In this document: in pieces, positions 1-51,863 of the stretch
How positions within the stretch are numbered: position 1 is the stretch's first letter
Layout: each line of letters starts with the position of its first letter
Source of the DNA: Basidiobolus meristosporus CBS 931.73
Lineage: Eukaryota; Fungi; Basidiobolomycota
NCBI GenBank assembly: GCA_002104905.1
Contig: MCFE01000386.1
Location: 1 to 64,000 of the forward strand
DNA length: 64,000 nucleotides
Reading direction: 5' to 3'
Notes under the pieces: generated by a model
Database searches by the model: none
The model's input: only the letters and a program-made list of their open reading frames with translations
What the model was told of the DNA's origin: nothing
Program-made: the position numbers and the translations under genes

Positions 1-16
1 AACTACATTGGCAAAA

Positions 17-2280: not shown

Positions 2281-2491
2281 TACTTCAGATTAACATGGCT
2301 TCTTTAGATACTTGTCATAAGTAAATAAAGATTTCACCACTTGGTGACTTTCCTCCCCCTAACCCTAAGTGTGGTGATTATCATCCCCCCTAACCCCTAT
2401 CCATCTATCAATTCTGACTTCTGGAATTTTTGCTCCTTCCCTCTTATCTCCCTGCTAATTTTCCCTCCCACCCACCCTCTTCTTATTTTTT

Positions 2492-3220
2492 ATGCCTTCA
2501 CTCCATTCCCTTCAGATTTCTTTCCTTGAGGAAAGGCTTGCACTTGTTGAGGCTGAAAATGCTTTACTCAAGAAACAAGTTCAAAAGCTGTTTTCTGCCT
2601 TCTCTGATCTGCAAGAATCTATTGTCCCTGTGCCAACTCTTCCTGCCAACACGACTCCCCAAGAATCATCTGCTGCTGTTCACTCTTCCTACTCTGAAGC
2701 TGTCAAAAAGTCTGTTCCTGCTTCCTCAAGATATCCTGCTGCTCCTCCCAAGAGTAAAAGAAAGTTTCCTGCCACTTCTGATTTGCCTCCTGCTACTGAC
2801 TGGGCTGTCTGCTACTTTGCCAATGTGGAGTTTATTCCTATATCTGACCACAGGATGTATCTCAAGCAACAAGGTTATAATTTATCCAAGATTGTTAACA
2901 TGAGATTTATCAACCATCACACTCTTGAGGTAGTACTTGACAAAAGTATTGCTAAACAGTTCTCTCAAAATGTCTAGGACCAATTTTACTGGGAACCTAC
3001 TGACCATGCCTTTTAAGGGTTTCCTGATTCTCCAGTTTACAAGACCTTCTCATTGGAGGAATCTCTGCTCTCAAGATTCACTTCACTTATCAAAAACTCC
3101 CCTTCACCTGCTGTTACCCACTTCTTAAAAGATCATTATATCTCTCAAGCTTATTTACTTCACACCCCCATGAACCTGAACTCCAGTGTACTCTGGGAGA
3201 CTGCCTTAACTTTAGCTTAG
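2492..3220 (+). pseudogene. ORF1/gag-like protein of a retroelement, interrupted by in-frame stops
   Basis: N-terminal coiled coil (LEERLALVEAENALLKKQVQKL), SYSEAVKK motif and an RRM-like segment. The frame continues past TAG (2975) and a TAA 39 bp later as DQFYWEP...RFTSLIKNSPSPAVTHFL up to a stop at 3220. Confidence 0.5.
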
Positions 3221-3419
3221 ATTTATTTGTATTCAACTTAGTGTTTACTTTGGGAATCTTCTATTCCCAGCTGGCTTCTTTATTTGTAGTCAGACTTGTC
3301 TGAAATCAAATAAAGATTTCACCTACCTTGGTGACTTTCCCTCCCCTAATATGTGGTATTCACTTAATGATTTATTGTACATATGGTAATATTTATATTT
3401 CTGCATGATCTTGACAAAA

Positions 3420-4010
3420 TAAGCCTCTAGAATATACTTAGGAAGGTTCCAACAGCATGTGTGCAAAGTGTGATGCTGTTTGGACAACCTGGAAAATGCT
3501 CATGCTCTGAGTACCTGATGTTTAGTTGAAAATAATCCAAGTAAATCTCAACTACGAGTTAGGTAAGTAGTCTTGGAGATTTTTAAGTAATGATCCAAGT
3601 GACAAAGTTAGGTTGATATCAAGGTGAAATTACAAACTTTTAATGGAATCACTACTTATACAACAGGATTCTCATTTCTTAACCCTGTAGGATCTTTATG
3701 ATATTGAATTTTGTCAAAGATATATTCTCTCAGCAGCTGAGCATGACAGGTTAGTGTCTTCTGATGCCTTCCAAGCATTCTTGGCAGTTTTTGCTTTTAA
3801 GCAATAAGTTGGCTATTCATCTTTACTATTAAGGGTAATGTGGTTTAAGGTACTCTATTCTTTCTACTGGCATTTCACAGCCTCTTCAGCTACACATTTA
3901 GGAGGGCACTCTTCTGGTATATCAATAGCCCAAAGACAAAATAAACACATACCCTGTGTTTAGGAAGGTCCCAACAACATGTGTGCAAGGTTTGGCTGCT
4001 TACTTAGCAA
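3420..4010 (-). pseudogene. Decayed coding fragments paralogous to 6750-7250
   Basis: Translations IYLDYF-x26-GT (LCTHAVGTFLS) and KPCTHVVGTFLK align with LYLDYF-x26-GT (KPCTLAPGTFSS) at ~6900-7020; many stops; CpG-depleted. Family not identified. Confidence 0.4.
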
Positions 4011-5299
4011 ATGAAGACTTCACCAAACTGGAGACTTTCCCTCCCACTACTTGGTGGCTTTCATCCCCCTAGTTCTAAGACAAGCAATTACCAGGGATAT
4101 TTTTGTATTCAAATCTGTGAGGTAACAGTAGTGTACTTTGCTTTAGGTATATATTAGAGAAGGTTCGAGACTGAACAGCCCTTTGGCAGTTGCTTTTATA
4201 TTATTGGATAATTACATCTAGTTAATACCAAAAACAATCAGTTCTGCTATATCGATGTTTCTGAATCAGTATCAGTAAGTGACAACAGCACACAAACGCT
4301 TTTAGGATAACTCTGTATAAGCAATATAGTTGGTGGTTCTGATGGCCCAATCCAGAATAACGGAAACCCCATTAAGAATATTGGACTTTTTCCTATGGCC
4401 AAATCTTTTCTTTTGGAACATCGGGAGGGGTCACTCATGCCGTGAGTTCTTGTCCTAGTAATTGATACAGTAATCTGTGCGAATTAGGTATTTTGATGGT
4501 GACCTGTATTTACCACACTCGAACCACACTCGAACGATCGGAGAATACAGATGCTCCCACAACATTGGCATCTTTCCCCAAGGAAGGAAAATTTACATTT
4601 GGCTACTAGTAGTTGTAGTGTGAGGGTAAATCTTATTCTACAACGGCATTGATCAGTCTATGAAATACCTTGAGCAGTAAAAGCTACTTCCATTATCCTC
4701 CAGGTGTAGTCATTGGTGAATTTTCGATACACAACGTGAACTATGGCCAAATCTTATTTTTGGAGGACAAATACTAGGTCCTTCATCACTCTAACCGCAC
4801 ATGCCATAAATTTCCTATCTTAGTTATCAGATTAGATATTTTGGTAGTAGCCACATTATACCAAATCCAATTAATCCGAGGATTGCCAATCAAAAAAGCC
4901 TCGTTTGTGAGGCTATATGTTATCTAAAGAAGGGATCAATAGTAACGAGTCACATTCCTTGAACTGTTTTGCTCAAATGTATTGAGGAAAAGGCTCTTTC
5001 ACCGATATCTCAACATTTCTCCCCACACATAGGGCCTGGATTGACTATTACTTCAGTGTACTACGCTACCGTAAATGGGGTATCGGTACAATCTTGTGCT
5101 AGATAGAATACTTCTGGTAATTGGAAAGTAAAGTTGTATTCTTCTCAAATTGATGTAACATATAAGGTAAGATAGTGAGGATAGGAATGAATTAGTATGA
5201 TTGACTCTTCGGTCCCACGACCACAACGCTGGTTCAAAGATTCCACACCACATAACACCACGTGGGAGGAGAGGACAAATTATTTCCAAACATGCACTA

Positions 5300-6700
5300 T
5301 AAAATGAGAACTGTCGCTTGACAAACATTGTACAACTTTCCACCATCCAAAAGCCTCACCGCTAAGCCGCCTATTCCGCCTGCAGGGTCTCCGCTACTCA
5401 GCCAAATATCTGGTGCTGATTGTTCTCCGTAGTGGTTGCTATGCTCACTGTTAGAGTATATCCAGAACACCGGACTGTAGTCTACTGTCAATTGGAATAA
5501 AGTGTTTATCAGTGATAATTATACATTTGTTGGGCAAAGTAACATCTAAATACTTGGTGCGCGTAAAACTAAACCCAGGGGAACAGAAAGATAACGGTTT
5601 TATGTCATCAGAAGAATGGTTTTGTATCATGTTAAAAATGCGCAGTTGCATATCACCCATGGGTCAGGCTACAGTTAAACTCAGGACAACTGTGCAAGTT
5701 TATAATATAGTATTAATTAGGGATGCAAACTGCTAGATGTAGAGTAACGGAACTCTCACTCGAAGTTCTAAATTCAGTTGTCTTTCCTTTTAAACACTTC
5801 GCCTCATATAGGCCCATCATCACATTACCGGGCCGCACTTATCCCTATCTTGGTGATTGGCATGTTAGTCTGCACAAATTGGGAATCTGATATCCACCAC
5901 ATTGGTTTCTTTCATCTATTTACTTTCAGTAAATTTGACTTTAAACTCTCTAACCGTTACCGGCAAAAGCAGTATAAAAAGAAGCCTGTCAATTGACCAA
6001 CGTTGTACAAATTTCCACTGTCCAAAAACCTCACCGTTAAGCCGCATATTCCGTCTACAGGTTCACCGCAATCGTCCGTGGCTCACTGTTCTCCGAAGTG
6101 CATACTATGCCACATGGTGCTCACCGCTCTCCATAGTGGTAGCTCTGCGCACTGGATAGCCCATTCATGTCATATTGTACCTGAGCAACGGGCTGTAGAT
6201 GAAAAGTCAACATATCCATTGTATTGATGGGAGATGTAACACGGAATAAAACGTTTACCAGTGATAATTACATACTTGTTGGACAAAGTAGCTATTGAAT
6301 ACTTGGCTAAGGTTGAAGAACAAACTCGGTATTTCGTTGTAGTCACGATATACCAAATATAACGAATCCAGCATATCCAAATAGATGTTTCCACAGCGTT
6401 GGGTTCTATCACCAATCTTACCAATACTTTTACCCTCCGTTGACTATTATTTACAGATACTTTTGCCCGCCGTTGACTATTATTTACAGATACTTTTGCC
6501 CTCCGTTGACTATTATTTATAGATACTTTTGCCTCCGTTGACTATTATTTATAGATACTTTTGCCCTCTATTGACTATTATTATTGTTGATGCAGTCAAT
6601 ATATTCATTGTATTGATGAGAGAGATAATACGGAATAAATCGTTTATCAGTGATAGTTATGCATTGATTATTTTGGTGCAAAGCTTAGGAAACAAACTGG
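5300..6700. repeat. Nested degenerate duplications (5300-5620 vs 5985-6330; third partial copy 6600-6700)
   Basis: Shared blocks such as TTGTACAA.TTTCCAC..TCCAAAA.CCTCACCG.TAAGCCGC and GGAATAAA..GTTTA.CAGTGATA.TTA recur two or three times. Confidence 0.75.
6425..6585. repeat. 33-bp minisatellite, 5 copies (TACTTTTGCCCTCCGTTGACTATTATTTA(C/T)AGA)
   Basis: Units start at 6425, 6458, 6491, 6524 and 6556 (one unit is 32 bp); head-to-tail with no spacers. Confidence 0.95.
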
Positions 6701-6749
6701 CCATATGGATATTAATGCTGGTATGAAATCACTCCAAAAAAATCAATAT

Positions 6750-7250
6750 CTCATTAATAACCATAGTAATAATTGGTGTATACATCATTGGAAGGTTTCT
6801 TGCATGTTGCAAAGGCTATATAGGGCCAGACTCATGAATGTATCCATACATCTATTCTGTCATTTCCAACTGCACCATTGCTATCACCTTGTGCAATATA
6901 CTTGAGAAGGTCCCTGGAGCAAGTGTGCAAGGCTTGAAGTTCTTATACAATCTGTTTTCTAAGATCTTTTATGTTCTTACACTTCAAGCTGTAATGAAGT
7001 AATCCAAGTAAAGTTTTGAGCCATGATATAAGTGACTGAACTAATAGAAATGCAAGTGTAAGCAGAAAATTTACTGTATCCAAAACCTTCCTGAGTATAT
7101 ATATAACAAGCTTTGTTAGATCATTAATTACATTCCTAGATAATGTTGAAGATTTTGTATTACACCTATAGTCTACAAATTTTAGAATCTCTTGCCCAAA
7201 TACTTTGTCGGTTTGGTAGGGGCAATTATTATTCCATATTGATATAATCA
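6750..7250 (-). pseudogene. Decayed coding fragment paralogous to 3420-4010
   Basis: Shares AATCCAAGTAAA and GAAGGT.CC...GTGTGCAA blocks with 3430-3550 and 3960-3990; no CpG seen between ~6660 and 7200. Confidence 0.4.
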
Positions 7251-7439
7251 TAGAGTGTTCCAGCGTTCATTTTTCTTCTTGGGTTAGGGCTACGAAAGAG
7301 TTGCTGGATCGAATCGGATTAAAGTAAGATGATCGGGCGAGCGATTGGCTTCAATTTCGATCCTATATATGGCCAATCCAGTCGATGATTCCCAGTCGAT
7401 GATTCAATCGGTAGATAACCATATACGACCCTACACTCT

Positions 7440-7725
7440 TGGTGGAACATTCCAAGCCAAATTAAAGTGGCTTACAAGCGATCTATCATGATCTACAGAT
7501 CGGATTTGAATCGGACATCACTTGTCACAGAAGTCAACTGCTACTACTACAAAACAGACTACAACTCCGAAGCAGTGATAGAGATTACAGAGGTCTACAG
7601 CCACAAAGTAGTGATAGTGAATGCCATTGTCCACAACAACAAAGCAAGCATTCTCCTCCCAACAAGGTTTACTGCTGCTTCTCGCTGGTAGAAAGGTCAG
7701 AGCATACATGTATATCATGATAGAG
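7440..7725 (+). pseudogene. Possible gag-like remnant
   Basis: One frame reads SGLQAIYHDLQIGFESDIT...VYCCFSLVERSEHTC, resembling a degraded zinc knuckle; weak similarity only. Confidence 0.2.
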
Positions 7726-8176
7726 CGCATCGACCTCTTTTCCTAAATGGGTGGGAGGACTTATATTAAATTTCCAAACTGGCATCTAGTTCTGACTCTA
7801 CACTTGTGTGGAAGCTGTCGCATTCCTCTTGAGCGGTAACAACCGAAACCACTTACGTGGAACTTTTTGCACACAGAAGCCTTCCTTGAAACGGGCTTCC
7901 GTTCTACACAGCTGAAATATGGTATTCCTAGACCACAACATACGCTGGCTATAGGAATGTCAAGCTATTCCCTAAAAGAGCATCAATGGCTTGAGGAGGA
8001 AATCACCCGACTCTGAAAATTTTCAGTTGCCATCATCTTCTATATATGCACTTATCTTTGCGAGTCCTGGTGGGCTCGACATGGAGCATCCACATTCTTA
8101 GAAGAAAGAAACTGGCAACCGGAAGTTATAAAAATGCGAAGGACCAGCTCAGTTCATCAGACACATCCCAACTACA

Positions 8177-8980
8177 ATGCTTCTTGCCACCGCTTTGTTC
8201 GCTTTCTGCGCTTTGACAGCCACTGATGCGCTTACCTGCCCTGATGGTAACGGGCTCTACTGTGGCAATACACTAGGTACACTATGCTGCGTTTACTTTG
8301 TATAGGACATATTGGCTAACTGTCGAATTTCATATATAGGACTTGACTCCGATGTTTTGTATAACTGCGACTCGGACTCTTGGAGCTGGAGCTACAATGC
8401 AGTCCAACAATGTAGTAATGGGTGTGTCAATGCTGCACCTGGAAGCCCCGATTATTGCGCGGAACAAAATGCCAGCAATAACAACAATGACAACAATAGC
8501 AACAACAGCAACAGCAACAGCAACAACAATAATGATAACAACAGCAACAACAACAATAATAATACTAACACCAATAACAGCGGAAACGTCACATATACCA
8601 ACACTCTGAACGTTGCCAACTATCCTCTTGTGTTCCGTTTTGACAATGGCCAGTGTACCGATTGGGCTGATGCTCGCTACGCCCAGATTACTGGTCACCA
8701 TGTTACTTGGTGGGGTGATGCTCGTTTCTGGGCTGTCAGTGCTCGTGAAGCTGGCTGGGTCGTTTCTAAAACCCCCAAGGTCCCTTCGATCATTGTCATT
8801 CAACCAGGCTACCAGGGAGTTGGCTCTGATGGTCACGTTGCCGTTGTCGAGGAAATCATGGCAGATGGAAGCGTTTACACCAGTGATTACAACTACATCA
8901 TCAATGGCTATGGTGGGCCATACATCAAAACATACGTCACCTTCTATCCAGGCAACGGGGTCGACTTCATCTGGTATTAG
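8177..8980 (+). CDS. Secreted CHAP-domain peptidoglycan hydrolase with N-terminal 6-Cys module and poly-Asn linker (intron 8277-8339)
   Basis: Signal peptide MLLATALFAFCALTATDA; GT..GCTAAC..AG intron keeps the frame; CHAP motifs GQCTDWA (catalytic Cys), WGDARFW and GHVAVVE (catalytic His); AAC-rich linker. Confidence 0.88.
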
Positions 8981-37831: not shown

Positions 37832-40800
37832 CTACTTTTGAACACGGAAGATACCCCAACTGTCTAATAGGAACTCGGTGTTAATCCAGCCAGGACGATA
37901 AGCCCAGTCACCGGTGTAATTACTGGCATAGAATTCATTGGTGATACTGGTGCCTGTACTGATTGCATTATTAACTGAGGAAACTCCGTGTTGTGGGGCC
38001 TTGAGTTGGTCTTCCCAGGCGTGGCCATGAAGATGGAACGAAAGCGGTCTTGGTTTATCCAGACCGCTGACAACGTGAAGTAATTGTTTAACTCCGGCCT
38101 GAGCGTGGAAGATGTGTGTTGAGGGATTGTTGTTTTTCAACCAGTTGGGTGCAGCAGCAGGCTGGTTGCGGTAGCTCATTGCCTTCAGACCAGTGTCTTG
38201 CAAACTAATAGTCGACTCGTTGGGAACAGGAGTAGTGAGGTTTGCAAGGATTTGGACTGGGCTGTTAACGGCATATGGGATTGGTTGGTTGACCTGATTA
38301 TTCTGGAATAGACGCAAGCCAGACTGTAAGAGCACCACCTTGTCTTGGTAAAGCAGTCTTCTGCGGTTCTCGGATTTACCATAGACATTGTTGCGGTAGT
38401 AAACATTGGCTTCTGCCCCGTACCATTTGTCAGGTGTTTGGTGCGAGTCCAGGATCACCAGAGCTCCAATAAGCCCGTGATGCTTGTGGTTGCGAATGTC
38501 AGCGTGATCCTGAATCGGGAGAGCACCCAAATGCTGGTCGGCATAGAGACTGTAGGAGATTGTCTTCCCAGGGCCAACAGTCGAGTCCGGGTTGTAGCCA
38601 ACATTCGTACCATCATCATATCTGACATCATGTTGTATGAGTGGCACATGCATAGATACCCTGCTAGACACCTTGCGGTCTGGAATGTCCGCTGTAACTG
38701 GGACAGGGAATGGCTCAGGCTCTAGCTGCTTCGGCAGAGCATTGTGCAGATGAATCAAAACACGCTCCCCTACCAGCCCTCTGATGATCAGCGGGTCGAC
38801 ATCCTTCCCGTTCACATTGAAGCACTCTCCGTTCTTGGGCTTGATGATCTTGGTGGTGTGGGGATGTTGGTACCCAGTCAAGCAATAGATCAGCCCAAAT
38901 GGATCACTCCACCCATCCGAGTTGTACACAATCTCCTGACGCTTTGCAGTCACGAAGTATTGGCGTTCACCAGTCACCTTGGATCTGAACTTGCTGGCTG
39001 CTCTGGTCAAGCTCTTGCCCACACCCTTGGACTGTCTCGTGTGTGCATACCGATATCTGGCGATGCTCTTCAGCAATGGCGAGTGGTAGAAGGATGATCT
39101 CCTTTCTTGAGAGTCAGGAATCGGAGGCAAGTGCTTCTGAGGGGAGTCATGAACACGAACAATGCCCCAGTTACCAAGCCATAGGTCATCCACACCACCG
39201 AGCTTGTAGAGATGATCACCAGCACTATAATCAGCCTGAACTCTGAATGTGAAACCTTCAGAGATACCAATAGTCTGCTGAGCAGTAACATTAACATTCG
39301 CAAGGTCTCTGAACTTTTGCCAGCGCATTCCATGCATCTCAAGACTGTGCGATTTGTCATGAGCACCTTGTGCCAAACGTATGATAATATTGTCCCCTCG
39401 GTAGGCTTCGAACAAAGTGGTCGAAGGATCCCCATACTTGTTCTTGCTACTGAACCACTCCGACGGGTCCAATCCCTTTCTCTCGGATAAAGGCTCATTT
39501 CTGTAATTTAACAAAACTATACCTTGCTCCGGGAATGGGCTTTGGGCAGGTGGTGGATTGATTGCAGTGCCGTTTGAATAAAATGCTGGTGCAAAGTCAC
39601 CAATGAACAGGACCTGCTCTCTGAATGACTCTTCCGGTCCAACCACTACTGCACTAACATTATAGCGCTGTTCAGTCTTTACATCACGTGGATTTAGGAA
39701 CTTTGAGCCTTCGGGAGCCACTGGCGCCAGCCCATAAAGCCCCTTCTTCTGGCGATAACTAGCAAACAAGTGATCGTGGAAGAATACGTGACCCAGAGCA
39801 TCGTCGATCCACCAGCGATTAATCAGATACTTTCCGAACCGAGCCCCACTAATATAGTTCCAGCCAACAGACGCACCATCACTACTAAGCACATCAAACT
39901 TGACGAGATGTACGTGCATTCCTGCCTCACCTTCGTGAGCCACAGCCTTACATCTCGGGAAATCGGGATCAAATACTGTGCCAGGAATGAATTCTGGCAG
40001 GTGGTTGTTGTATTGACTGACGGAGACACTCTTCTGAGTCACTCGCATTGCAAATGGCTCGTACTTGGCTGGGCGGCCAGGATCCGGTTTGACTTGCTCT
40101 TCTGCCTGGTACATGTGGCCATAAGGATAATACCATCCATGCTTGTTGTATTCGAGTTGGCGAGATTGAATACTGACATTGAAGAAGTGCGTATCGACCT
40201 CACGAGGAGTGGGGATCAGGGTGAAGAAATTTCCAGGTTGAGGGTCCGAGTTCATATTGGCAACCTCTACCTTGGTAGCAGGACGGTAGTCCGAGCCCTC
40301 AGGGACCTTGCCTAGAATCTCCTCTGGCCATGGAACTCTCGGAGATTTCTGACCAGGAGTACCAGCAATGAAGTTGGGGAAGCCTGGCTGGATCTCGCTC
40401 TTGTATGGGGGATGTGGTCGACCCGGTAGTGGAGTCAACTTGGGAATAGGAGAGCCATCTGGATAGGTATAGCGCCCGTCTTCGTAGCGGTCCAACACAC
40501 GCATCATACTCCACATTCCTGTCTCGAAGTGAACGTACAAATGGCAATGGAGAATAACATCTCCGATCAACTTGAGTCTAGAGCCGGCGCCGAAGTGGAT
40601 GTCCAAATCCCAGGTGGTCAATGGGGACAAGGAGAAGGAGTCGATGATGTCACTCTTACGATCACCTCTGCCTGAACTCCATTGATGGCCGTGCAAGTGG
40701 AATACGTGAGTTTCGGTAACACCAGTCTCGATCACTCTGAATCTCACCGGATCACCGGCGTATGCTCGGAAAACTGGGGTGGCTGGATCGCCAAACAGCC

Positions 40801-41860
40801 AGCTTGAGTGATGCTGTTCTTCACCATTCACGTTCGATATAGTGCCTTCGTTGATCATTCTCCACAGTGCGAGTTCCCGATTCTTCATTGGCTCCGAGCG
40901 GTAGTTGAAGAAATTCTCGATGAGGGTGCTCCCGGTGCTGTTGTTTCCGGTGCAAGGGTCGATTGTTGGGGGGCCGTTGTTGACCATTTGCACACGATCC
41001 TGGAAGAAGAGGGTGAACTCTCTGAAGGAGCAATCGGGGTGTGAATGCATCCTTTCTTCTGCATAGAAGTTTTCCACCTCCGGGCAACCTCCATGCATGG
41101 GGTAGGGATGGATATCAACATGGGTGCCCTCCTCTGTAGGCTTCCCAGTGACCGGGTCGGTCCAGAGAGAACCTCTTGGCTCCACAATGATAGCGGCGAA
41201 CAACCCATGGACTACAGTACCTGTTGGGAATCCATCGTAGTTTCCACCGTCAGATATGAGGTAGGTTCCTTCCTTCAAGCAGGGCCATTCATATTCTGTC
41301 TCCTCATTGGTACTAACAATACTGGCTTGGTTATCACCGACTACAGTCCCGTCATTTGTGATGTCGTATCCAAAGAGGTAAGGATGCATCCCGACTTGGC
41401 GCCCATTGACAAGATTTGTGAATTTGACGTGCATCTTATCACCCTGGTTGCAGCGAAGTACCAGGGGACTGACGAGTGGATGTGTGGGCAAGTCACTGGA
41501 GTTCTGGGCTATCAGAGCTTGTAAATCCTGACGATAGGTGAGAAGTTCCTTGGCATTCTTCTTCAAAGCAAACATGGCGCCAGCTGGATCGTAGTCGCCC
41601 CAGTTGTTCACGACTAGAGGCATATCTATCGCCATGACATCATATTGACGGGTCTTGGGGACAAGTCGCTGAGACATACTGCCGCCTCTCTGATTCCAGT
41701 TGGATCGGCCTCTGTACGAGCTGTAGCCTCTTCTTTGTTCAGCGGCCGAAATTCCAGGAAGAAGCAAACCGAGTACCAGCATCAGCAGCATCAAGTAGAT
41801 CATAGGACGTCCACCCCTGTCCCGTGCGTGCTCACGTTTCGATGTACGATTGTTGAACAT
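37832..41860 (-). CDS. Large secreted multicopper oxidase, MnxG-like (copy 1), intronless, ~1,340 aa
   Basis: Hydrophobic signal (IYLMLLMLVLGLLLPGISA); copper motifs in order HVFHLHGHQW, HCHLYVHFETGM, MHVHLVKFD, FFHDHL; extra degenerate C-terminal motifs (HSLEMHG, FHLHGHAW). Confidence 0.9.
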   Translation of the reverse strand: MFNNRTSKREHARDRGGRPMIYLMLLMLVLGLLLPGISAAEQRRGYSSYRGRSNWNQRGGSMSQRLVPKTRQYDVMAIDMPLVVNNWGDYDPAGAMFALKKNAKELLTYRQDLQALIAQNSSDLPTHPLVSPLVLRCNQGDKMHVKFTNLVNGRQVGMHPYLFGYDITNDGTVVGDNQASIVSTNEETEYEWPCLKEGTYLISDGGNYDGFPTGTVVHGLFAAIIVEPRGSLWTDPVTGKPTEEGTHVDIHPYPMHGGCPEVENFYAEERMHSHPDCSFREFTLFFQDRVQMVNNGPPTIDPCTGNNSTGSTLIENFFNYRSEPMKNRELALWRMINEGTISNVNGEEQHHSSWLFGDPATPVFRAYAGDPVRFRVIETGVTETHVFHLHGHQWSSGRGDRKSDIIDSFSLSPLTTWDLDIHFGAGSRLKLIGDVILHCHLYVHFETGMWSMMRVLDRYEDGRYTYPDGSPIPKLTPLPGRPHPPYKSEIQPGFPNFIAGTPGQKSPRVPWPEEILGKVPEGSDYRPATKVEVANMNSDPQPGNFFTLIPTPREVDTHFFNVSIQSRQLEYNKHGWYYPYGHMYQAEEQVKPDPGRPAKYEPFAMRVTQKSVSVSQYNNHLPEFIPGTVFDPDFPRCKAVAHEGEAGMHVHLVKFDVLSSDGASVGWNYISGARFGKYLINRWWIDDALGHVFFHDHLFASYRQKKGLYGLAPVAPEGSKFLNPRDVKTEQRYNVSAVVVGPEESFREQVLFIGDFAPAFYSNGTAINPPPAQSPFPEQGIVLLNYRNEPLSERKGLDPSEWFSSKNKYGDPSTTLFEAYRGDNIIIRLAQGAHDKSHSLEMHGMRWQKFRDLANVNVTAQQTIGISEGFTFRVQADYSAGDHLYKLGGVDDLWLGNWGIVRVHDSPQKHLPPIPDSQERRSSFYHSPLLKSIARYRYAHTRQSKGVGKSLTRAASKFRSKVTGERQYFVTAKRQEIVYNSDGWSDPFGLIYCLTGYQHPHTTKIIKPKNGECFNVNGKDVDPLIIRGLVGERVLIHLHNALPKQLEPEPFPVPVTADIPDRKVSSRVSMHVPLIQHDVRYDDGTNVGYNPDSTVGPGKTISYSLYADQHLGALPIQDHADIRNHKHHGLIGALVILDSHQTPDKWYGAEANVYYRNNVYGKSENRRRLLYQDKVVLLQSGLRLFQNNQVNQPIPYAVNSPVQILANLTTPVPNESTISLQDTGLKAMSYRNQPAAAPNWLKNNNPSTHIFHAQAGVKQLLHVVSGLDKPRPLSFHLHGHAWEDQLKAPQHGVSSVNNAISTGTSITNEFYASNYTGDWAYRPGWINTEFLLDSWGIFRVQK

Positions 41861-42452
41861 CGTCAAGTGATACCAGTATCTACCTGAGCTGACGTTCTCG
41901 ATGGCACCACAGCAGCTTATATATTGGCTAGCCTGTGACTGCTGTCTCATAGACGCACGCTTTGAGAGAATTTAGCTGGCACTGCATACAACTTTTGTTT
42001 GATCATTCCCATATCTTCTGTGTTTATCACGTTCCGGACTACCGATCAATATGAAACGAAAAAATGAAATTTTGTCACGCATTTCGACCGACCGAAAGCC
42101 AAGCAAAATCACGCAGACATTGGTAGATGAAACTTGTTCCGATTCCTACGCGATCAGAGCTTAGCTGCTTGATTGGATGGTCAAGAATTTCCCTGTTGTG
42201 TTGTTGCGCATGACACGATTGTTCACTGATTCGAGGGGTTTTCTTGATTCGTTGATTAGAGGAAATGCACTGGACCGCTTACGATATTTACTTGTTACTG
42301 TGGCCTTTCCTTCCAACTCCTGCATTTGTGGCAGCTCAATCGACACTTTTTATTTGGCTCCATATACTGACCCATGATGCAAGACAAGAATGGTTTGAAC
42401 CGACTTTATTAACGAAACCACTGAATTTCTAAATTCTCTACAAAATTGCCAT

Positions 42453-45400
42453 CTACTTGTGCACCCGGAAAATTCCCCAGTTCGATAATAGAAATTCCGT
42501 GTTCATTAGGCCAGTTCGATAAGCCCAGTCACCAGTGTAATTACTGGCATAGAATTCATTGGTGATACTGGTGCCTGTACTGATTCCACTGTTGACTGAA
42601 GAGACACCATGTTGCGGTGCCTTGAGCTGATCTTCCCAGGCGTGGCCGTGAAGATGGAACGGAAGCGGTCTTTCTTTGTCTAGACCGCTGACAACACGAA
42701 GATATTGTCGAACACCAGCCTGGGCATGGAAGATTGGCGTGGAGGGGTTACTATTCTGCAACCAGCTAGGTGCAGAGACTGGTTGGTTTCGGTAGTTCAT
42801 TGCCTTCAGGCCCGAATCCTCGGCACCAATGCCTGCCTCATTTGGTACAGGAGTAGTGAAGTTTGCGAGGACTTGAACCGGACTGTCGTTGGCGTATGGG
42901 ACAGGTTGGTTCTTTTCGCCATTTTGGAACAGGCGCAAGCCAGACTGTAAGAGCACCACCTTGTCTTGGTAAAGCAGTCTTCTGCGGTTCTCGGATTTAC
43001 CATAGACATTGTTGCGGTAGTAAACATTGGCTTCTGCCCCGTGCCATTTGTCAGGTGTTTGGTGCGAGTCCAGGATCACCAGAGCTCCAATAAGCCCGTG
43101 ATGCTTGTGGTTGCGAATGTCAGCGTGATCCTGAATCGGGAGAGCACCCAAATGCTGGTCGGCATAGAGACTGTAGGAGATTGTCTTCCCAGGGCCAACA
43201 GTCGAGTCCGGGTTGTAGCCGACATTCGTACCATCATCATATCTGACATCATGTTGTATGAGTGGTACATGCATAGATACCCTATTTGACACCTTACGAT
43301 TTGCATCATCTACTGGAACTCGAACAGGGAATGGCTCAGGCTCTAGCTGCTTCGGCAGAGCATTGTGCAGATGAATCAAAACACGCTCCCCTACCAGCCC
43401 TCTGATGATCAGCGGGTCGACATCCTTCCCGTTCACATTGAAGCACTCTCCGTTCTTGGGCTTGATGATCTTGGTGGTGTGGGGATGTTGGTACCCAGTC
43501 AAGCAATAGATCAGCCCAAATGGATCACTCCACCCATCCGAGTTGTACACAATCTCCTGACGCTTTGCAGTCACGAAGTATTGGCGTTCACCAGTCACCT
43601 TGGATCTGAACTTGCTGGCTGCCCTGGTCAAGCTCTTGCCCACACCCTTGGACTGTCTCGTGTGTGCATACCGATATCTGGCGATGCTCTTCAGCAACGG
43701 CGAGTGGTAGAAGGATGATCTCCTTTCTTGAGAGTCAGGAATCGGAGGCAAGTGCTTCTGAGGGGAGTCATGAACACGAACAATGCCCCAGTTACCAAGC
43801 CATAGGTCATCCACACCACCCAGCTTGTAGAGATGATCACCAGCACTATAATCAGCCTGAACTCTGAATGTGAAACCTTCAGAGACTCCGATAGTTTGTT
43901 GATTAGTAACATTAACATGCGCAACATCTCTGAACTTTTGCCAGCGCATTCCGTGCATCTCAAAACTATGGGCCTTATTATGCGAACCTTGCACTAAACG
44001 TATGATAATATTGTCCCCTCGGTAGGCTTCGAACAAAGTGGTCGAAGGATCCCCATACTTGTTCTTGCTACTGAACCACTCCGACGGGTCCAGTCCCTTT
44101 CTCTCGGATAAAGGCTCATTTCTGTAGTTCATCACCACTATACCTTGATCCTGTCTCATATTTTGGTTGGCAGGTGGATTGATTGCAGTGCCATTTGCAT
44201 AAAATGCCGGGGTGAAATCGCCAATGAAGACAATCTTTTCTCTGAATGACTCTTCAGGACCAACCACTATGGCACTTGTGGTGTACGGTTGTGGAGATTC
44301 TGCATTACGTGCGCTCAGGAACTTGGAGCCTTCAGGAGCCACCGGTGCCAATCCATAAAGCCCCTTCTTCTGACGATAGTTCGCAAACAAGTGGTCGTGG
44401 AAGAATACGTGACCCAGAGCATCGTCAATCCACCAACGATTCACTAGATACTTTCCGAACCGAGCCCCACTCATGTAGTTCCAACCAACAGACGCACCAT
44501 CACTACTAAGCACATCAAACTTGACGAGATGTACGTGCATTCCTGCCTCACCTTCGTGTGCAACTGCCTTACATTTGGGGAACTCTTCATCAAATGGAGT
44601 GGCTGGGAATTCGTGTGGAAGGTGATTCGTGAACTGGCTTACTGCCACACTATGCTGCGTCACTCGCATTGCAAACGGCTCGTACTTGGCGGGACGACCA
44701 GTATCCGGCTTCACCGTCTCCGCCGCCGCATACATATGTCCATAAGGGTAGTGCCATCCGTATTTGTTGTATTCTACGTTTCGGGACAGAATGCTGACAT
44801 TGAAGAAATCATGTTTGACCTCACGAGGTGTGGGGATCAGGGTGAAGAAGTTCCCTGGTTGAGGATCCGAATTCATACTAGCCACCTCCAATTCGGTTGC
44901 TGGGCGATAGTCAGAACCTTTGGGGATCTTGCCTAAGAGCTCCTCTGGCCACGGGACCCTTGGGGATTTCTGCCCGGGCGTACCAGCAATGAAGTTGGGG
45001 AAGCCTGGCTGGATCTCGCTCTTGTATGGCGGATGTGGTCTCCCTGGTAGTGGGATCAACTTGGGAATAGGTTTACCGTCGGGATAAGTGTGGCTACCAT
45101 CCTCGTAGCGGTCCAACACACGCATCATACTCCACATTCCTGTCTCGAAGTGAACGTACAAATGGCAATGGACGATGACATCGCCAATTGTCTTTAGTCT
45201 AGAGCCAGCACCGAAGTGGATATCCAAGTCCCAGGTGGTCAATGGGGACAAGGAGAAGGAGTCGATGATGTCACTCTTACGATCACCTCTGCCTGAACTC
45301 CATTGATGGCCGTGCAAGTGGAACACGTGGGTCTCGGTAACACCAGTGTCGATCACTCTGTACCGCACAGGATCTCCCGCGTATGCTCTGTAGATTGGGG

Positions 45401-46522
45401 TGGCTGGATCACCAAACAACCAGCTGGAATGGTGTTGTTCCTCACCGTTGACCTTGGATATCTTGCCAGCCTCCATCATTCGCCACAGCGCCAACTCCCG
45501 ATTCTTCATTGGCTCCGAACGGTAGTTGAAGAAATTGATGATTGGATTCCTTGCGTAGCTTCTCCGGTACAGGGATCTTTCGTCGGGGCAGCGTTGTTCT
45601 TGATCCTCAACCGATCCTGGAAGAACATGGTGAACTCTCTGAAGGAGCAATCAGGATGTGAGTGCATCCTCTCTTCTCCATAGAAGTCGGACACCTTCGG
45701 GCAACCTCCATGCATGGGGTAGGGATGGATATCAACATGGGTCCCATCCACGGTGGGCTTCCCGGTCACTGGATCAGTCCACAGGGAACCTTTTGGCTCT
45801 ACAATGATGGCTCCGAACAGTCCATGAACCACAGTGCCTGTGGGGGATCCATCATAATCACCACCATCGGCGATGAGGTAGGTTCCTTCCTTTAGGCAAG
45901 GCCATTCATACTCCTTCTCTTCGTCAGTGCTAAGGGTACTGACATAGTTATTCCCGACCGCAGTTCCATCGTTCTTTACGTTGTACCCGAAGAGCGAAGG
46001 GTGCATTCCGACTTTACGCCCTTTAACAAGGTTTGTGAATTTGACCCGCATCTTATCACCCTGGTTGCAGCGAAGTACCAAGGGATTGACGAGGGGGTGC
46101 ATAGGCAAGTCGCTGGAATTCTGGCCTATCCGGGCTAGTATATCTTCCCTATAGGGGAGGAGCTCCCTCAGATTCTTCTTCAAGGTAAACATGGCACCGT
46201 TCTCATCATAGTCGCCCCATGCATTGACAACAAACGGCATATCTATCGCTACGACCTCATAGTGCCGGGTCTGTGGGACAAGTCGATGTGGTATGCGCTC
46301 CACACTACGATCGTACTCTCCATGTCGGTAGTGCGATCGAGCGCCGCTCTGGTGGCTCTGACGAGACCGGCTATGACGAGAATGATGGTCTGACCGGTGT
46401 CTATATGCCGACACCTCCGGTAACAAGCACAACACAAGTAGGAGCAGAATCAAGTAGACCCCGGGATGCATGCCCCGTTCCTGGCGACGCTCACACTTCG
46501 ATGATCGATTGCTGAACATCAT
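42453..46522 (-). CDS. Large secreted multicopper oxidase, MnxG-like (copy 2); one 1-bp frameshift at ~45545
   Basis: Paralog of copy 1 along its full length; ORFs 45506-46522 and 42453-45650 join if GGAAT is read GGAAAT (QG-NPIINFFNYRSEP). All four copper motifs are intact. Confidence 0.88.
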
Positions 46523-47476
46523 CAGTGGTACCAGAATCTACCTGAACTGATACCATTTGCCCATTAGCCACTCGATCTATTTATACTCCGCTCGGTAACC
46601 ACATTCACGAAACATCCGCAGTATGCGGGATTTAAGCTACAATGATTTGAATGAACTGATGTGTTCTAGGTGCAAACACTCGCCCACAGCCAAATCCAAC
46701 CGTTTCACCCGCTTATGTTGGTCGAAATCGGCAGTTTGGAAACAACCGAATGAAACGTCGTTACGAGTCTTGGATGCCAATCTCATCGGGATGTTGGCAA
46801 ATGGGCTCGGATGGCCCGTTCCTGTACATTTCAAAGTGAGACTAACCTCTGTCAAAGCTCACTCCACCAACGAGCCCACTCAACAAACTCCGCATGACGA
46901 TTGTCAGCTTTGTCACCGCTACGGTTGAACTAATACATTTAATGATAGTAGAGAAAAGCAAGTATGGAGGTTCAAAAGCAAATTACACAAAAAATAACAT
47001 ACGGCTAATTGTTGGGTTCTATCTTCGTCTAGTGCCATGGTGTGGAATCATTAAAAAAAGGTAGAAGATGACGAAAATAAAAATACATGGGGCAAAAAAT
47101 TGACACAGGGGGAAATCATAATGTGAAGATGCGGCTTCTATATTGTAACAGTTCGGCTATGCAAAAATCAAAAACAGGGTGGATGGATTATATGCACATG
47201 TAATAAATGGATCATTACATGATGTTCGTCATGTGAAGCAGCTTCACACACCATCCACGCTCAGTATCTTGATATATCTTGAGATATAGCGGCCGCGTGA
47301 CATCATTTTATCATCGTCGTCTTCGAAAAGGTCCTGCCCAGACAGGCAAGTAGGAAAAGGTATTGAATGCTTGAACGAAGCTAGTGTACAATAATGCGCG
47401 TGGGATAAGACAAATTTCAAAGAGATCACCTGCTCTTTTCCCTCCGGAGGCTCTACAAATCTAGAAAATCATTGGC

Positions 47477-49526
<2,050 letters not shown>

Positions 49527-51311: not shown

Positions 51312-51863
51312 TTATGATTCAACGCTCAATGTGGAAACTCCAATCAGCCCAACATCTTCTATTAACCCAGTGAGCCAGACGCTAATCTCAATCTGACCAA
51401 GTCTGTAGATCGCAAGATCACTGGACTGAAAGTATTGGTCAAAGACCTTCTTTAGGTTGGAAAACTTTGAAGAATCTTCGAGGGCGTCGAAGAAAGCCCC
51501 AAAGGAGGTTTGCGTTTCGGCAACAGGTGCGTCAAGTTTAATCAGCTGGGAGAATTCCTCGACGGACGGGAGTTTGGTGGTGGAGAGGCGCTTCTCGGAT
51601 ATTTTGCTGGATGGAATGAAGAAGAAGGTGAACGGATAGTCTGCTTCACTGATATAAAGCAAATCCTCGGTGGCGTCTAGGAGGTCGGTCCGGATCTGCT
51701 TCACCAACTCCGGATTCTTGCTGTGCTCGACCTCGACCTCGTCCTCGACCTCAGAAGCCTGACTTTCGTCTTGTGCGACATTTTCCTGGCGCTTTTGGGC
51801 AAGCTCCTTGTCGGTCTTGTTTTGTTTTTGAAGAAAAGCCAAGTAATCGGAATCTGAGCTCAT
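51312..51863 (-). CDS. Nuclease A inhibitor (NuiA)-like protein
   Basis: LLYISEADYPF, FF..L..KF..LKKVF and YRLGQIEISVWLTG..GLIGVSTLSVES follow the cyanobacterial NuiA pattern (LLFMSESEYPF..YRLGEVELDVYVIG..LAGISTKVVET); intronless. Confidence 0.8.
   Translation of the reverse strand: MSSDSDYLAFLQKQNKTDKELAQKRQENVAQDESQASEVEDEVEVEHSKNPELVKQIRTDLLDATEDLLYISEADYPFTFFFIPSSKISEKRLSTTKLPSVEEFSQLIKLDAPVAETQTSFGAFFDALEDSSKFSNLKKVFDQYFQSSDLAIYRLGQIEISVWLTGLIEDVGLIGVSTLSVES

What the first reader, a model, noticed from the sequence alone, without database searches (positions are those of the whole stretch)
37832..46522. Tandem MnxG-type (bacterial manganese-oxidase-like) multicopper oxidases in a fungus
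Seen: two intronless ~1,340-aa MCO genes in an otherwise intron-rich genome, each with a eukaryotic-looking signal peptide. Their copper motifs run HVFHLHGHQW, HCHLYVHF..GM, MHVHLV, FFHDHL, with T1 His/Cys/His/Met intact. Known: this permuted order and large size are characteristic of Bacillus spore-coat MnxG (HVFHYHVH, HCHLYPHF, MHIHFV, FFHDHL), not of fungal 3-domain laccases, Fet3 or bilirubin oxidase-like MCOs. Inference: horizontal acquisition from bacteria (likely Firmicutes), retargeting to secretion, then duplication, possibly giving extracellular Mn(II)/metal oxidation. I do not know of a described fungal MnxG-type enzyme.
Basis: partly seen in the sequence, partly recalled or inferred. 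Interest (0 to 1): 0.9.

Follow-up and report, generated by a model that had tools for sequence, protein, structure and literature searches.

The report
Secreted MnxG-type copper oxidases in fungi
Two neighbouring genes in the fungus Basidiobolus meristosporus encode secreted relatives of the bacterial manganese-oxidising enzyme MnxG; they belong to a small, undescribed fungal branch of that family shared with soil chytrids, and whether they oxidise manganese has not been tested.

Summary
On the minus strand, 37832-41860 and 42453-46522 encode two ~1,340-1,356-aa multicopper oxidases. They align end to end with Bacillus MnxG (PDB 9BXA, E 1e-196, ~35% identity). All T1 and trinuclear copper ligands are intact, in the MnxG order. 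Both have N-terminal secretion signals and no introns.

Contigs from three public runs carry an extra base after 45548 that restores the frame, so this is an error in the PacBio assembly.

- The genes are MnxG-family and ultimately bacterial in origin.
- They are not a recent Firmicutes-to-Basidiobolus transfer.
- All fungal copies (Basidiobolus, plus Spizellomycetales and Rhizophlyctidales chytrids) form one well-supported clade.
- That clade sits beside a mixed-phylum "long-form" bacterial clade, away from Bacillota. AU tests reject splitting the fungi.
- The chytrid copies contain introns; the Basidiobolus copies do not.
- No MnxE or MnxF accessory genes occur in the window.
- dN/dS between the two copies is about 0.15, with a ~0.9-kb gene-conversion tract.

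Mn(II) oxidation is plausible but untested. I found no paper describing fungal MnxG homologues. The scan separately noted a third copy on another piece of this genome.

The parts
37832..41860 (-). Gene 1: intronless CDS of a 1342-aa MnxG-family six-domain multicopper oxidase (start at MFNNRT; the open frame extends upstream to an ATG at 41950)
   Evidence: (P0001, 100% identity)
41744..41860 (-). Gene 1 N-terminal secretion signal: basic n-region, hydrophobic core MIYLMLLMLVLGLLLPG, ISA|A cleavage-type motif
   Evidence: Inferred from hydrophobicity and motif; no dedicated signal-peptide predictor was available.
40679..40708 (-). Gene 1 domain-2 motif HVFHLHGHQW (T1 His plus two trinuclear-centre His; laccase L3 type)
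40514..40549 (-). Gene 1 domain-2 motif HCHLYVHFETGM (T1 Cys, His and axial Met plus two trinuclear-centre His; L4 type)
39893..39919 (-). Gene 1 domain-3 motif MHVHLVKFD (HxH, L1 type)
39764..39784 (-). Gene 1 domain-3 motif FFHDHLF (HxH, L2 type)
38401..39301 (-). Gene 1 side of a ~0.9-kb gene-conversion tract, 95-100% nucleotide identity to gene 2 against 73-85% elsewhere
   Evidence: dS 0.11 inside against 0.84 outside; about double read depth on the gene 2 side of the tract
41861..42452 (.). Spacer between the tandem copies (gene 1 upstream region and gene 2 3' flank)
   Evidence: genomic contigs of X2 and X3 bridge it at even depth
42453..46522 (-). Gene 2: intronless CDS of a ~1356-aa paralogue. 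The window sequence lacks one base after 45548 (plus strand), which splits it into frames 45506-46522 and 42453-45650.
45548..45549 (.). Site of the 1-nt assembly deletion (GG in the window, GGG in reads, on the minus strand). All read-derived contigs of three runs have the extra base.
   Evidence: table 4
46406..46522 (-). Gene 2 N-terminal secretion signal (MHPGVYLILLLLVLCLLPEVSA|Y, preceded by a basic n-region)
43022..43922 (-). Gene 2 side of the gene-conversion tract
47477..49243 (-). Flanking eukaryotic DEAD-box helicase (context). The same neighbour flanks the B. ranarum orthologue.

Best explanation
The region holds two intact, tandemly duplicated, intronless genes of Basidiobolus meristosporus. 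Each encodes a secreted six-cupredoxin-domain multicopper oxidase of the MnxG family. As in Bacillus MnxG, the single catalytic unit is a T1 copper (His, Cys, His, Met) plus the trinuclear copper cluster, formed between domain 2 (HxxHxH and HCHxxxHxxxxM) and domain 3 (HVH, HDH). Electrons taken from a substrate at T1 would reduce O2 to water at the cluster. The genes belong to a fungus-specific branch of the family, found so far only in Basidiobolus and in the soil chytrid orders Spizellomycetales and Rhizophlyctidales. This branch most likely descends from one old transfer of a stand-alone 'long-form' bacterial MnxG-like gene, not a Bacillus-type mnxEFG operon. It then acquired N-terminal secretion signals. 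Within Basidiobolus the gene duplicated repeatedly. The pair here arose after the split from B. ranarum (or has been homogenised since), exchanges sequence by gene conversion, and is under purifying selection. By analogy with the only characterised close relative, the most likely substrate is a metal ion, Mn(II) first. The enzyme would work outside the cell without the MnxE3F3 cap. My confidence by step: MnxG-family membership, gene integrity and fungal chromosomal location are shown (about 0.95). A single-origin fungal clade of bacterial ancestry is well supported (about 0.8). Secretion is inferred from sequence (about 0.8). Mn(II) oxidation is inference only (about 0.35-0.4). The overall figure of 0.75 refers to the statement without the Mn(II) substrate claim.
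For: Family: phmmer to PDB 9bxa_A MnxG gives E 1.4e-196. BLASTP is collinear over 71-1342 against 3-1194 of a Bacillus-type MnxG at 34% identity. AF2 models cover four plus two beta domains, with pLDDT 86 and 81; the best PDB fold is 9bxa_A with TM 0.82 and 0.69, then ceruloplasmin and factor V/VIII at about 0.49. All twelve copper ligands are invariant. Integrity: the extra base after 45548 appears in contigs of 3 runs, and dN/dS between the copies is 0.13-0.16. Fungal location: the flanks are a DEAD helicase, FancD2, Ras and 6PGD. The DEAD-MCO-Ras neighbourhood is syntenic in B. ranarum. Genomic depth is an even ~250-280x across genes and spacers. GC3 equals that of the neighbours. Fungal clade: SH-aLRT is 100 in FastTree and in three LG+C20 trees. 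AU tests reject chytrids plus bacteria without Basidiobolus (p 2e-5), Basidiobolus plus bacteria without chytrids (p 6e-56), and chytrids plus their most similar bacterial group (p 1e-5). Inside the chytrids the gene tree follows the two orders. The chytrid genes lie on contigs of 0.46-1.5 Mb, with eukaryotic neighbours confirmed for Spizellomyces and Powellomyces. They contain GT-AG introns, one at the same position in two genera. A second database search with a chytrid query found no other eukaryotes. Bacterial side: fungi share the 22-25-aa insert of the long-form clade. MnxE/F HMMs hit only the Bacilli-clade loci and nothing in the window at E<=10. Secretion: every fungal copy has an N-terminal signal or anchor, while the nearest bacterial proteins start directly at the conserved R-Y-D-V-V-A. 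Possible expression: run X1 (27 Mb of contigs) covers only the gene 2 ORF, as one colinear 4072-nt contig at depth 77, with zero depth on the flanks. That is the pattern of a cDNA library; this is inference, because the run kind is not on record.
Against: No enzymatic, proteomic or confirmed RNA evidence exists, and no RNA run could be listed. Bacillus MnxG needs MnxE/F for expression as an active complex (PMC5622069), and these are absent here. Most bacterial family members, many from anaerobic gut Lachnospiraceae, have no known function, so family membership does not fix the substrate. The trees are unrooted. The fungal, Basidiobolus and chytrid stems are all long (0.3-0.5 changes per site), and the AU tests were defined after seeing the tree. 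Fungi plus Bacillota is only marginally rejected (p 0.038). A single old transfer requires many later losses across Fungi, and it does not explain why all Basidiobolus copies lack introns while chytrid copies have many. MnxE/F were searched only in this 64-kb window, not the whole genome.
Confidence: 0.75

Rival explanations
1. One reading: a recent transfer from a Firmicutes (Bacillus-type mnxG) donor directly into Basidiobolus, followed by duplication.
For: Bacillus MnxG is the only characterised close relative and gives a very strong match. The Basidiobolus copies have no introns. Basidiobolus is reported to carry many bacterial genes (PMC7466969). The AU test against fungi plus Bacillota is only marginal (p 0.038).
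Against: In every tree, fungi lie on the long-form side of a split with SH-aLRT 99-100, away from Bacillota. They carry the long-form insert that Bacillota lack. Identity to Bacillota proteins (34-35%) is lower than to Actinomycetota, cyanobacterial or chytrid proteins (36-44%). No mnxE/F is present. Chytrid homologues form a clade with Basidiobolus. Composition is fully ameliorated, and the paralogue groups are only 54% identical, so residence is old.
Confidence: 0.04
2. Two (or more) independent transfers from closely related, still unsampled bacteria into Basidiobolus and into the chytrid ancestor, or one bacterial transfer followed by fungus-to-fungus transfer, rather than vertical descent from a common fungal ancestor.
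For: The distribution is very patchy: two chytrid orders and one zoopagomycote genus among all eukaryotes searched. Intron states contrast: none in six Basidiobolus copies, many in chytrids. All hosts are soil or dung organisms. Chytrid proteins are slightly more similar to one Actinomycetota group (44-45%) than to Basidiobolus (39-40%). A divergent Fimicolochytrium paralogue branches below the Basidiobolus-chytrid split.
Against: No bacterial sequence among 5.8 billion proteins interrupts the fungal clade. AU tests reject each way of breaking it. These data cannot distinguish fungus-to-fungus transfer from vertical descent with losses.
Confidence: 0.3
3. The enzymes are not manganese oxidases. 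They are secreted or wall-associated phenol, pigment or iron/copper oxidases (laccase-like or ferroxidase-like), for example hardening or pigmenting spore walls or detoxifying metals.
For: MCOs are promiscuous. A single T1 site with an axial Met is shared with CotA, CueO and Fet3-type enzymes. The MnxE3F3 ring through which Mn(IV) exits in Bacillus Mnx (PMC13689576) is missing. Most family members occur in organisms not known to oxidise Mn, including anaerobes.
Against: The only biochemical data in this family point to Mn(II). Conserved His clusters outside the catalytic pair (HS.EMHG in D4, RNHKHHG in D5, FHLHGH in D6) are retained from Bacillus to fungi, which suggests conserved extra metal sites. 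Nothing here tests substrate choice.
Confidence: 0.45
4. Bacterial contamination or a chimeric assembly; or gene 2 is a dead pseudogene.
For: The window sequence of gene 2 is frameshifted. The public model K493DRAFT_409940 bridges the shift with an artificial intron. Both genes are intronless and of bacterial type.
Against: Flanking genes are eukaryotic, and one has introns. Synteny with B. ranarum holds. Read depth is even and contigs bridge the gene-spacer junctions. Eukaryotic signal peptides are present. GC3 is host-like. Reads restore the frame, and dN/dS is 0.15.
Confidence: 0.02

Closest known systems
Bacillus sp. PL-12 / SG-1 MnxG, catalytic subunit of the Mnx Mn(II) oxidase complex (PDB 9BXA)
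   Same: Six cupredoxin domains in three two-domain repeats. Alignment is collinear end to end at ~35% identity. The copper-ligand motifs are identical and in the same permuted order, with T1 and the trinuclear cluster between domains 2 and 3. Additional His clusters in D4-D6 are conserved. It is the best structural match to both AF2 models.
   Different: The host is eukaryotic. An N-terminal secretion signal replaces exosporium localisation. No MnxE/MnxF genes lie nearby. There is an extra 22-25-aa insert between DIHP and SFREF, and a basic ~50-aa linker before domain 5. The fungal proteins belong to a different deep branch of the family. Activity is untested.
Uncharacterised 'long-form' bacterial MnxG-like MCOs (Actinomycetota MAGs, Geodermatophilus, Oculatella/Scytonema, Belnapia/Roseomonas, Allosphingosinicella, Pontibacter, Archangium)
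   Same: This is the nearest bacterial group in all trees. It shares the insert after DIHP, is stand-alone without mnxE/F, and has variable neighbours. Identity is 36-45%.
   Different: These proteins have no signal peptide at the start. Many carry His/Gly-rich inserts that the fungal proteins lack. Their function is unknown too; source labels of 'manganese oxidase' are automatic.
Pseudomonas putida GB-1 MnxG (NCBIfam NF041487 equivalog)
   Same: A large MCO implicated in Mn(II) oxidation, with detectable homology centred on the domain-2 copper motifs.
   Different: Much more distant: 201 bits against a cut-off of 3100. Even Bacillus-type MnxG reaches only 349 bits. It is about 1,900 aa long.
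Fungal Mn(II)-oxidising laccases / three-domain MCOs (Acremonium strictum KR21-2, Periconia and others) and Fet3
   Same: Secreted fungal copper oxidases, some shown to oxidise Mn(II) (PMC11220447).
   Different: They have three domains and 548-662 aa, with the trinuclear cluster between the first and last domain. They are reported only from Ascomycota and Basidiomycota. Structural match to the model is only TM ~0.23. Their evolutionary origin is unrelated to the MnxG branch.
Eukaryotic six-domain MCOs (ceruloplasmin, hephaestin, Chlamydomonas Fox1; factors V/VIII)
   Same: Six cupredoxin domains, and the second-best fold matches (TM ~0.49).
   Different: Sequence identity is about 10%. In ceruloplasmin the T1 sites lie in domains 2, 4 and 6 and the cluster lies between domains 1 and 6 (textbook knowledge), not between domains 2 and 3. 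A 2013 survey found MnxG-like proteins only in prokaryotes and could not link them significantly to the eukaryotic group (PMC3600357).

Membership tests
MnxG-like six-domain multicopper oxidase family (sequence and fold family of Bacillus MnxG) | Full-length collinear homology to MnxG over six cupredoxin domains | tested here: met
   phmmer E 1.4e-196 to 9bxa_A. BLASTP covers 71-1342 against 3-1194 at 34% identity. AF2 shows four plus two beta domains with TM 0.82 and 0.69 to 9bxa_A.
MnxG-like six-domain multicopper oxidase family (sequence and fold family of Bacillus MnxG) | One T1 plus trinuclear copper site built from HxxHxH and HCHxxxHxxxxM in domain 2, followed by HxH and HxH in domain 3 (permuted relative to laccases) | tested here: met
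   Motifs are present in both genes, and the ligand columns are invariant in the 12- and 40-sequence alignments.
Bacillus Mnx complex (MnxG capped by an MnxE3F3 ring) | mnxE and mnxF accessory genes adjacent to mnxG | tested here: not met
   HMMs were built from MnxE and MnxF orthologues verified against 9bxa_B and 9bxa_E. They hit 17-18 Bacilli-clade loci and nothing in the six-frame translation of the window at E<=10. The rest of the genome was not searched.
Bacillus Mnx complex (MnxG capped by an MnxE3F3 ring) | Mn(II) to Mn(IV) oxidase activity | not testable with these tools
   Needs an enzyme assay (leucoberbelin blue) on recombinant protein or culture supernatant.
NCBIfam NF041487 copper_ox_MnxG (equivalog, Pseudomonas type) | Score at or above the curated cut-off of 3100 bits | tested here: not met
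   201 bits. Bacillus-type and long-form bacterial members also fail, at 215-349 bits, so this model does not cover this part of the family.
Gene acquired by a fungus from bacteria (interkingdom HGT) | Fungal sequences placed among bacterial homologues, with no homologues in other eukaryotes | tested here: met
   Two searches of 5.8 billion proteins found only Basidiobolus and two chytrid orders among eukaryotes. The fungal clade lies beside the long-form bacterial clade. The trees are unrooted, so direction rests on the bacterial breadth of the family.
Gene acquired by a fungus from bacteria (interkingdom HGT) | Physical integration in the eukaryotic chromosome, not contamination | tested here: met
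   Eukaryotic flanks, synteny in B. ranarum, even read depth and bridging contigs, host-like GC3, introns in the chytrid copies.
   The fungal clade is sister to a whole mixed-phylum clade, so no donor phylum can be named. A Bacillota sister relationship is disfavoured (p-AU 0.038; the insert is absent from Bacillota).
Secreted eukaryotic protein | Cleavable N-terminal signal peptide | tested here: inconclusive
   A hydrophobic core (Kyte-Doolittle 15-residue mean 2.4-3.1) and AxA-type motifs are present in all Basidiobolus gene-1-type copies, and chytrid copies have signals or anchors. No dedicated predictor or proteomic data were available.

The most novel reading that the evidence does not exclude
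Early-diverging soil fungi (Basidiobolus, Spizellomycetales, Rhizophlyctidales) carry a bacterial-derived, secreted MnxG-type enzyme that oxidises Mn(II) outside the cell without the MnxE3F3 cap. It would be the first eukaryotic MnxG-type manganese oxidase and a previously unrecognised fungal route to Mn(III)/Mn oxides. It would have been inherited from a single very old transfer, or passed between fungi, and could serve as a relative time marker for these lineages.
Probability: 0.3. Interest if true: 0.75.

Novelty: new member of a known kind. Interest (0 to 1): 0.6.

Why it matters
MnxG is the model enzyme for bacterial manganese biomineralisation. In the literature I could search, it is treated as prokaryotic. 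Fungal Mn(II) oxidation is attributed to three-domain laccases, peroxidases or superoxide in Ascomycota and Basidiomycota.

An intact, secreted MnxG branch under selection in early-diverging fungi has three uses.
- It gives a directly testable candidate for a new fungal metal-oxidation activity.
- It offers a natural stand-alone version of an enzyme that, in Bacillus, can only be produced together with accessory proteins.
- It provides a shared derived gene linking Basidiobolus with two soil chytrid orders, which bears on old bacteria-to-fungus or fungus-to-fungus transfer.

On the practical side, two public gene models of this genome are wrong because assembly frameshifts were bridged with artificial introns. 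The gene 2 frameshift is shown by reads to be an assembly error. The one in the third copy is probably the same but could not be checked.

Tried and rejected
1. Intron as the cause of the gene 2 frame break. Rejected: the alignment with gene 1 leaves no room for one, and reads add a single base.
2. RNA evidence. No RNA run could be listed. Only the coverage pattern of run X1 hints at cDNA.
3. AU test on the 59-row data set. It did not finish in two 300-s calls, so I repeated it on 25 rows.
4. Using the NCBIfam MnxG cut-off as a membership test. It is uninformative, because the model is Pseudomonas-type and even Bacillus-type MnxG fails it.
5. Looking for conserved accessory genes beside long-form bacterial homologues as a clue to function. 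The neighbours are unrelated: an S8 protease with LysM, an M6 peptidase, a PKD protein, a transposase and a LuxR-type regulator.
6. Checking whether the published Basidiobolus HGT list contains these genes. The supplements are not held, and the main text does not mention copper or oxidase.
7. The JACS 2024 cryo-EM paper on Mnx is not held, so I could not compare Mn-binding and tunnel residues.
8. The apparent intron in the third B. meristosporus copy (P0005). Homologous coding sequence runs through it in another frame, so it is another 1-nt frameshift bridged by the gene model.
9. Full exon maps of the chytrid genes. tblastn recovered only part of the exons, so intron numbers are given as non-coding length, not counts.

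Full report
WHAT IS THERE

[quoted passage not shown] On the minus strand lie two large open frames.
- Gene 1 is uninterrupted. The frame runs 37832..41950, and homology with its paralogues and the annotated protein begins at MFNNRT (41860), giving 1342 aa.
- Gene 2 appears as two overlapping frames, 45506..46522 and 42453..45650.

The break in gene 2 lies between ...DPCTGEATQG and IINFFNYRSEP.... The alignment with gene 1 leaves no room for an intron and shows a net -1 shift. I laid the contigs of the three public runs that hold this DNA on 40700-46600. All three carry one extra C after 45548 on the plus strand (GG becomes GGG on the coding strand). That restores a single ~1356-aa frame reading ...EATQGNPIINFF.... 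The genome was assembled from PacBio reads (PMC7466969), so this is a homopolymer assembly error and gene 2 is intact. The public model for gene 2 (P0002) hides the error behind an artificial intron and a wrong N-terminus.

IS IT MnxG-LIKE?

Yes, by sequence and by fold.
- phmmer against all PDB chains gives MnxG of the Bacillus sp. PL-12 Mnx complex (9bxa_A) at E 1.4e-196. The next hits are two-domain laccases at about 1e-10, covering one domain.
- BLASTP against a Bacillus-type MnxG is collinear from residue 71 to 1342 at 34% identity. A second alignment reveals the internal repeat.
- The start motif of each two-domain unit (R-x-Y-x-V-x-A...YN) occurs three times, near ORF residues 101, about 587 and 996.
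- The AlphaFold model of residues 62-960 has pLDDT 85.8 and pTM 0.87 and shows four beta domains. Its best PDB fold match is 9bxa_A (E 8e-84, TM 0.82), followed by ceruloplasmin and factors V/VIII at about 0.49. Fungal laccases reach only about 0.23.
- The model of residues 925-1342 has pLDDT 81.3 and pTM 0.82 and shows two beta domains. Its best match is also 9bxa_A (E 2e-29, TM 0.69).
- The protein therefore has six cupredoxin domains.

HVFHLHGHQW and HCHLYVHFETGM lie in domain 2, and MHVHLVKFD and FFHDHLF lie in domain 3. Their ligand residues are invariant in alignments of 12 and 40 homologues. Further His clusters in D4 (HS.EMHG), D5 (RNHKHHG) and D6 (FHLHGH) are conserved from Bacillus to fungi. 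The NCBIfam MnxG equivalog model is Pseudomonas-type. It gives only 200-350 bits, against a 3100 cut-off, to every member tested, including a Bacillus-type MnxG (P0057). It is therefore not a useful test here.

IS IT REALLY IN THE FUNGAL GENOME, AND IS IT ALIVE?

The flanking genes are eukaryotic:
- a DEAD-box helicase directly upstream (47477-49243);
- FancD2 split into several ORFs;
- a Ras GTPase;
- 6-phosphogluconate dehydrogenase.

In B. ranarum the orthologue P0004 is also intronless and sits in a DEAD - EXS - MCO - Isy1 - Ras neighbourhood. A second B. ranarum contig has a tandem pair. Runs X2 and X3 cover genes and spacers evenly at about 250-280x, with contigs bridging the junctions. 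Depth is about double in the part where the two copies are nearly identical. GC3 (0.545 and 0.559) falls within the range of the neighbours (0.48-0.565).

Between the two copies dN/dS is 0.13-0.16, with dS 0.84. A ~0.9-kb tract (38401-39301 and 43022-43922) is 95-100% identical with dS 0.11, which indicates gene conversion.

Run X1 has 27 Mb of contigs and its kind is not on record. It covers only the gene 2 ORF, as one colinear 4072-nt contig at depth 77, plus a 153-nt piece of gene 1, with no depth on the flanks. That pattern fits cDNA and suggests that gene 2 is transcribed and unspliced. This is inference; no RNA run could be listed.

SECRETION

All gene-1-type Basidiobolus proteins start with a ~20-residue basic stretch. 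A 14-16-residue hydrophobic core follows, and then ISA|A, VSA|Y or ASA|F. Spizellomycetales copies have short classic signal peptides. Rhizophlyctidales copies have an N-terminal anchor-like segment. The nearest bacterial proteins begin directly with the conserved R-Y-D-V-V-A. I had no signal-peptide predictor, so this rests on hydrophobicity and motifs.

WHERE DOES IT COME FROM?

Among eukaryotes, two searches of 5.8 billion proteins found homologues only in these taxa:
- B. meristosporus (three copies) and B. ranarum;
- the chytrids Spizellomyces, Powellomyces and Fimicolochytrium (Spizellomycetales);
- the chytrids Rhizophlyctis and Borealophlyctis (Rhizophlyctidales).

In bacteria the family is very large and spans Bacillota (Bacillaceae and many gut Lachnospiraceae), Actinomycetota, Cyanobacteriota, Pseudomonadota, Bacteroidota and Myxococcota.

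I built a FastTree of 198 rows and three LG+C20 trees of 56, 59 and 25 rows. All place the fungal copies in one clade (support 100). Within it, Basidiobolus and the main chytrid copies are reciprocally monophyletic, and a divergent Fimicolochytrium paralogue branches below both. Among the main chytrid copies, the 56-row and 25-row mixture-model trees recover the two orders (support 83-85), while the FastTree and 59-row trees leave that split unresolved. The fungal clade sits next to a mixed-phylum clade of longer bacterial proteins, on the far side of a well-supported split from the Bacillota and the Actinomadura-type sequences.

AU tests on the 25-row set gave these results:
- chytrids plus long-form bacteria without Basidiobolus: rejected, p 2e-5;
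- Basidiobolus plus long-form bacteria without chytrids: rejected, p 6e-56;
- chytrids plus their most similar bacterial group: rejected, p 1e-5;
- fungi plus Bacillota: only marginally rejected, p 0.038.

An independent character agrees with the trees. Fungi and the long-form clade share a 22-25-aa insert between DIHP and SFREF, which Bacillota and Actinomadura-type proteins lack.

The chytrid genes lie on contigs of 0.46-1.5 Mb, with eukaryotic neighbours confirmed for Spizellomyces and Powellomyces. They contain GT-AG introns. About 2.1 kb (Powellomyces) and 1.3 kb (Spizellomyces) of sequence inside the gene is non-coding. One intron sits at the identical position (...GWH|DP...) in both genera.

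The gene has therefore resided in fungi for a long time. The donor phylum cannot be named, and a recent Firmicutes origin is not supported.

Several points remain open. All six Basidiobolus copies lack introns, even though their paralogue groups are only about 54% identical. The distribution across Fungi is very patchy. One old transfer with many losses, fungus-to-fungus transfer, or two transfers from one unsampled bacterial lineage all remain possible. I rate the last two together at about 0.3.

ACCESSORY PROTEINS

In Bacillus, MnxG is active only as a complex capped by an MnxE3F3 ring, and it needs MnxE/F for expression (PMC5622069, PMC13689576). I identified MnxE and MnxF next to mnxG in the Bacilli-clade loci, usually just upstream, and confirmed them against 9bxa chains B and E (E 6e-34 and 4e-29). 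HMMs built from them hit only those 17-18 loci. They hit nothing in the window at E<=10, and nothing in any Lachnospiraceae, Actinomycetota or long-form locus. Neighbours of the long-form bacterial genes are unrelated to each other. The fungal enzymes, like most of the family, are therefore stand-alone.

HOW IT LIKELY WORKS

Shown: an intact T1 plus trinuclear copper site at the domain 2/3 interface, in a six-domain MnxG fold.

Inferred: the protein is exported, takes single electrons from a substrate at T1 and reduces O2 to water. By analogy with the only characterised relative, the substrate would be Mn(II). Without the E3F3 exit ring, the product might be released as Mn(III) or Mn oxide at the hyphal or spore surface.

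I put Mn(II) oxidation at 0.35-0.4. A different physiological substrate (phenols or pigments for wall hardening, Fe(II), Cu(I)) is about as likely.

WHAT IS KNOWN

- Searches of the paper library found nothing linking MnxG to Basidiobolus or to fungi.
- A 2013 survey of six-domain copper proteins found MnxG-like sequences only in prokaryotes (PMC3600357).
- A 2024 paper states that fungal Mn(II) oxidation is known from Ascomycota and Basidiomycota and attributes it to 548-662-aa laccases/MCOs (PMC11220447).
- Basidiobolus is already known for many bacterial-like genes, with 811 candidates reported (PMC7466969; bioRxiv 10.1101/2021.12.02.471044). I could not check whether these genes are among them.
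- The scan itself noted the same stretch twice, and a third copy on another contig.

VERDICT

MnxG-type, bacterial ancestry, secretion signal and duplication all hold. A Firmicutes donor and a Basidiobolus-specific event do not. Mn oxidation is untested. This is a new member of a known enzyme family in an unexpected host group. I score interest at 0.6.

Noticed in passing
L083:3569-3690 (B. meristosporus contig MCFE01000211.1, third MnxG-like copy, P0005): The single 'intron' in the public model K493DRAFT_374135 is not an intron. Homologous coding sequence (GYKEPMATDW...LEPLIIRG...) runs through it in another frame, so a 1-nt frameshift was bridged by the gene model, as in gene 2. It is probably another PacBio indel. 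I could not check it against reads.
   Followed up: partly
window 42453-46522 (public model P0002 = K493DRAFT_409940): The public protein model for gene 2 has a spurious N-terminus (MALDEDRTQQ...). It skips about 30 real residues and reads about 25 residues in the wrong frame to get past the assembly frameshift.
   Followed up: yes
window 51312-51863 (-): A 183-aa ORF matches the NuiA nuclease-A-inhibitor family (Pfam PF07924, E 2.5e-14), which I know mainly from cyanobacteria. It may be another bacterial-type gene on this contig.
   Followed up: no
window 8177-8980: Another first-stage note (s1-212572) flags a bacterial-type CHAP peptidoglycan hydrolase here. Together with the MCO pair and the NuiA-like ORF, this contig may be rich in bacterial-like genes.
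   Followed up: no
window 1-8000: GC content is about 0.39-0.40 here against 0.42-0.51 in the rest of the window, with a strongly negative GC skew (-0.21) at 2001-4000. Not examined.
   Followed up: no
L081:51-1993 and 2780-6805 (B. ranarum contig JASJQH010000624.1): B. ranarum also has a head-to-tail pair of these oxidase genes (a 625-aa annotated gene 51 bases from the contig start, possibly a partial copy, plus P0003), on a different contig from the syntenic single copy P0004. Tandem duplication has therefore happened more than once, or the locus itself is duplicated.
   Followed up: partly
L085:8729-8847 and L084:8440-8506: Powellomyces and Spizellomyces share an intron at the same codon boundary (...GWH|DP...) of their MnxG-like genes. 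Basidiobolus has continuous coding sequence at that point.
   Followed up: partly
L014:10557-11344 versus L058:5327-5975 and 15 other Bacilli loci: mnxE and mnxF lie upstream of mnxG in most Bacilli-clade loci but downstream in Bacillus bruguierae, where a CopC/CopD-like membrane protein sits upstream. No E/F occurs near the many Lachnospiraceae, Clostridia or Actinomycetota MnxG-like genes.
   Followed up: partly
P0019, P0016, P0121 and other long-form bacterial homologues, region after the DPC motif: Many long-form bacterial proteins carry His/Gly- or Cys/Gly-rich inserts of up to ~100 residues (GHGG..., HHHRHH...), which look like metal-binding loops. The fungal proteins lack them.
   Followed up: no
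window 42448-46518 (run X1): The one X1 contig covering gene 2 starts inside the second codon of the long ORF. If that is near the true 5' end of the transcript, translation would start at the internal Met (MHPGVYLILLLL...), giving a short classic signal peptide. Contig ends are not reliable transcript ends.
   Followed up: no
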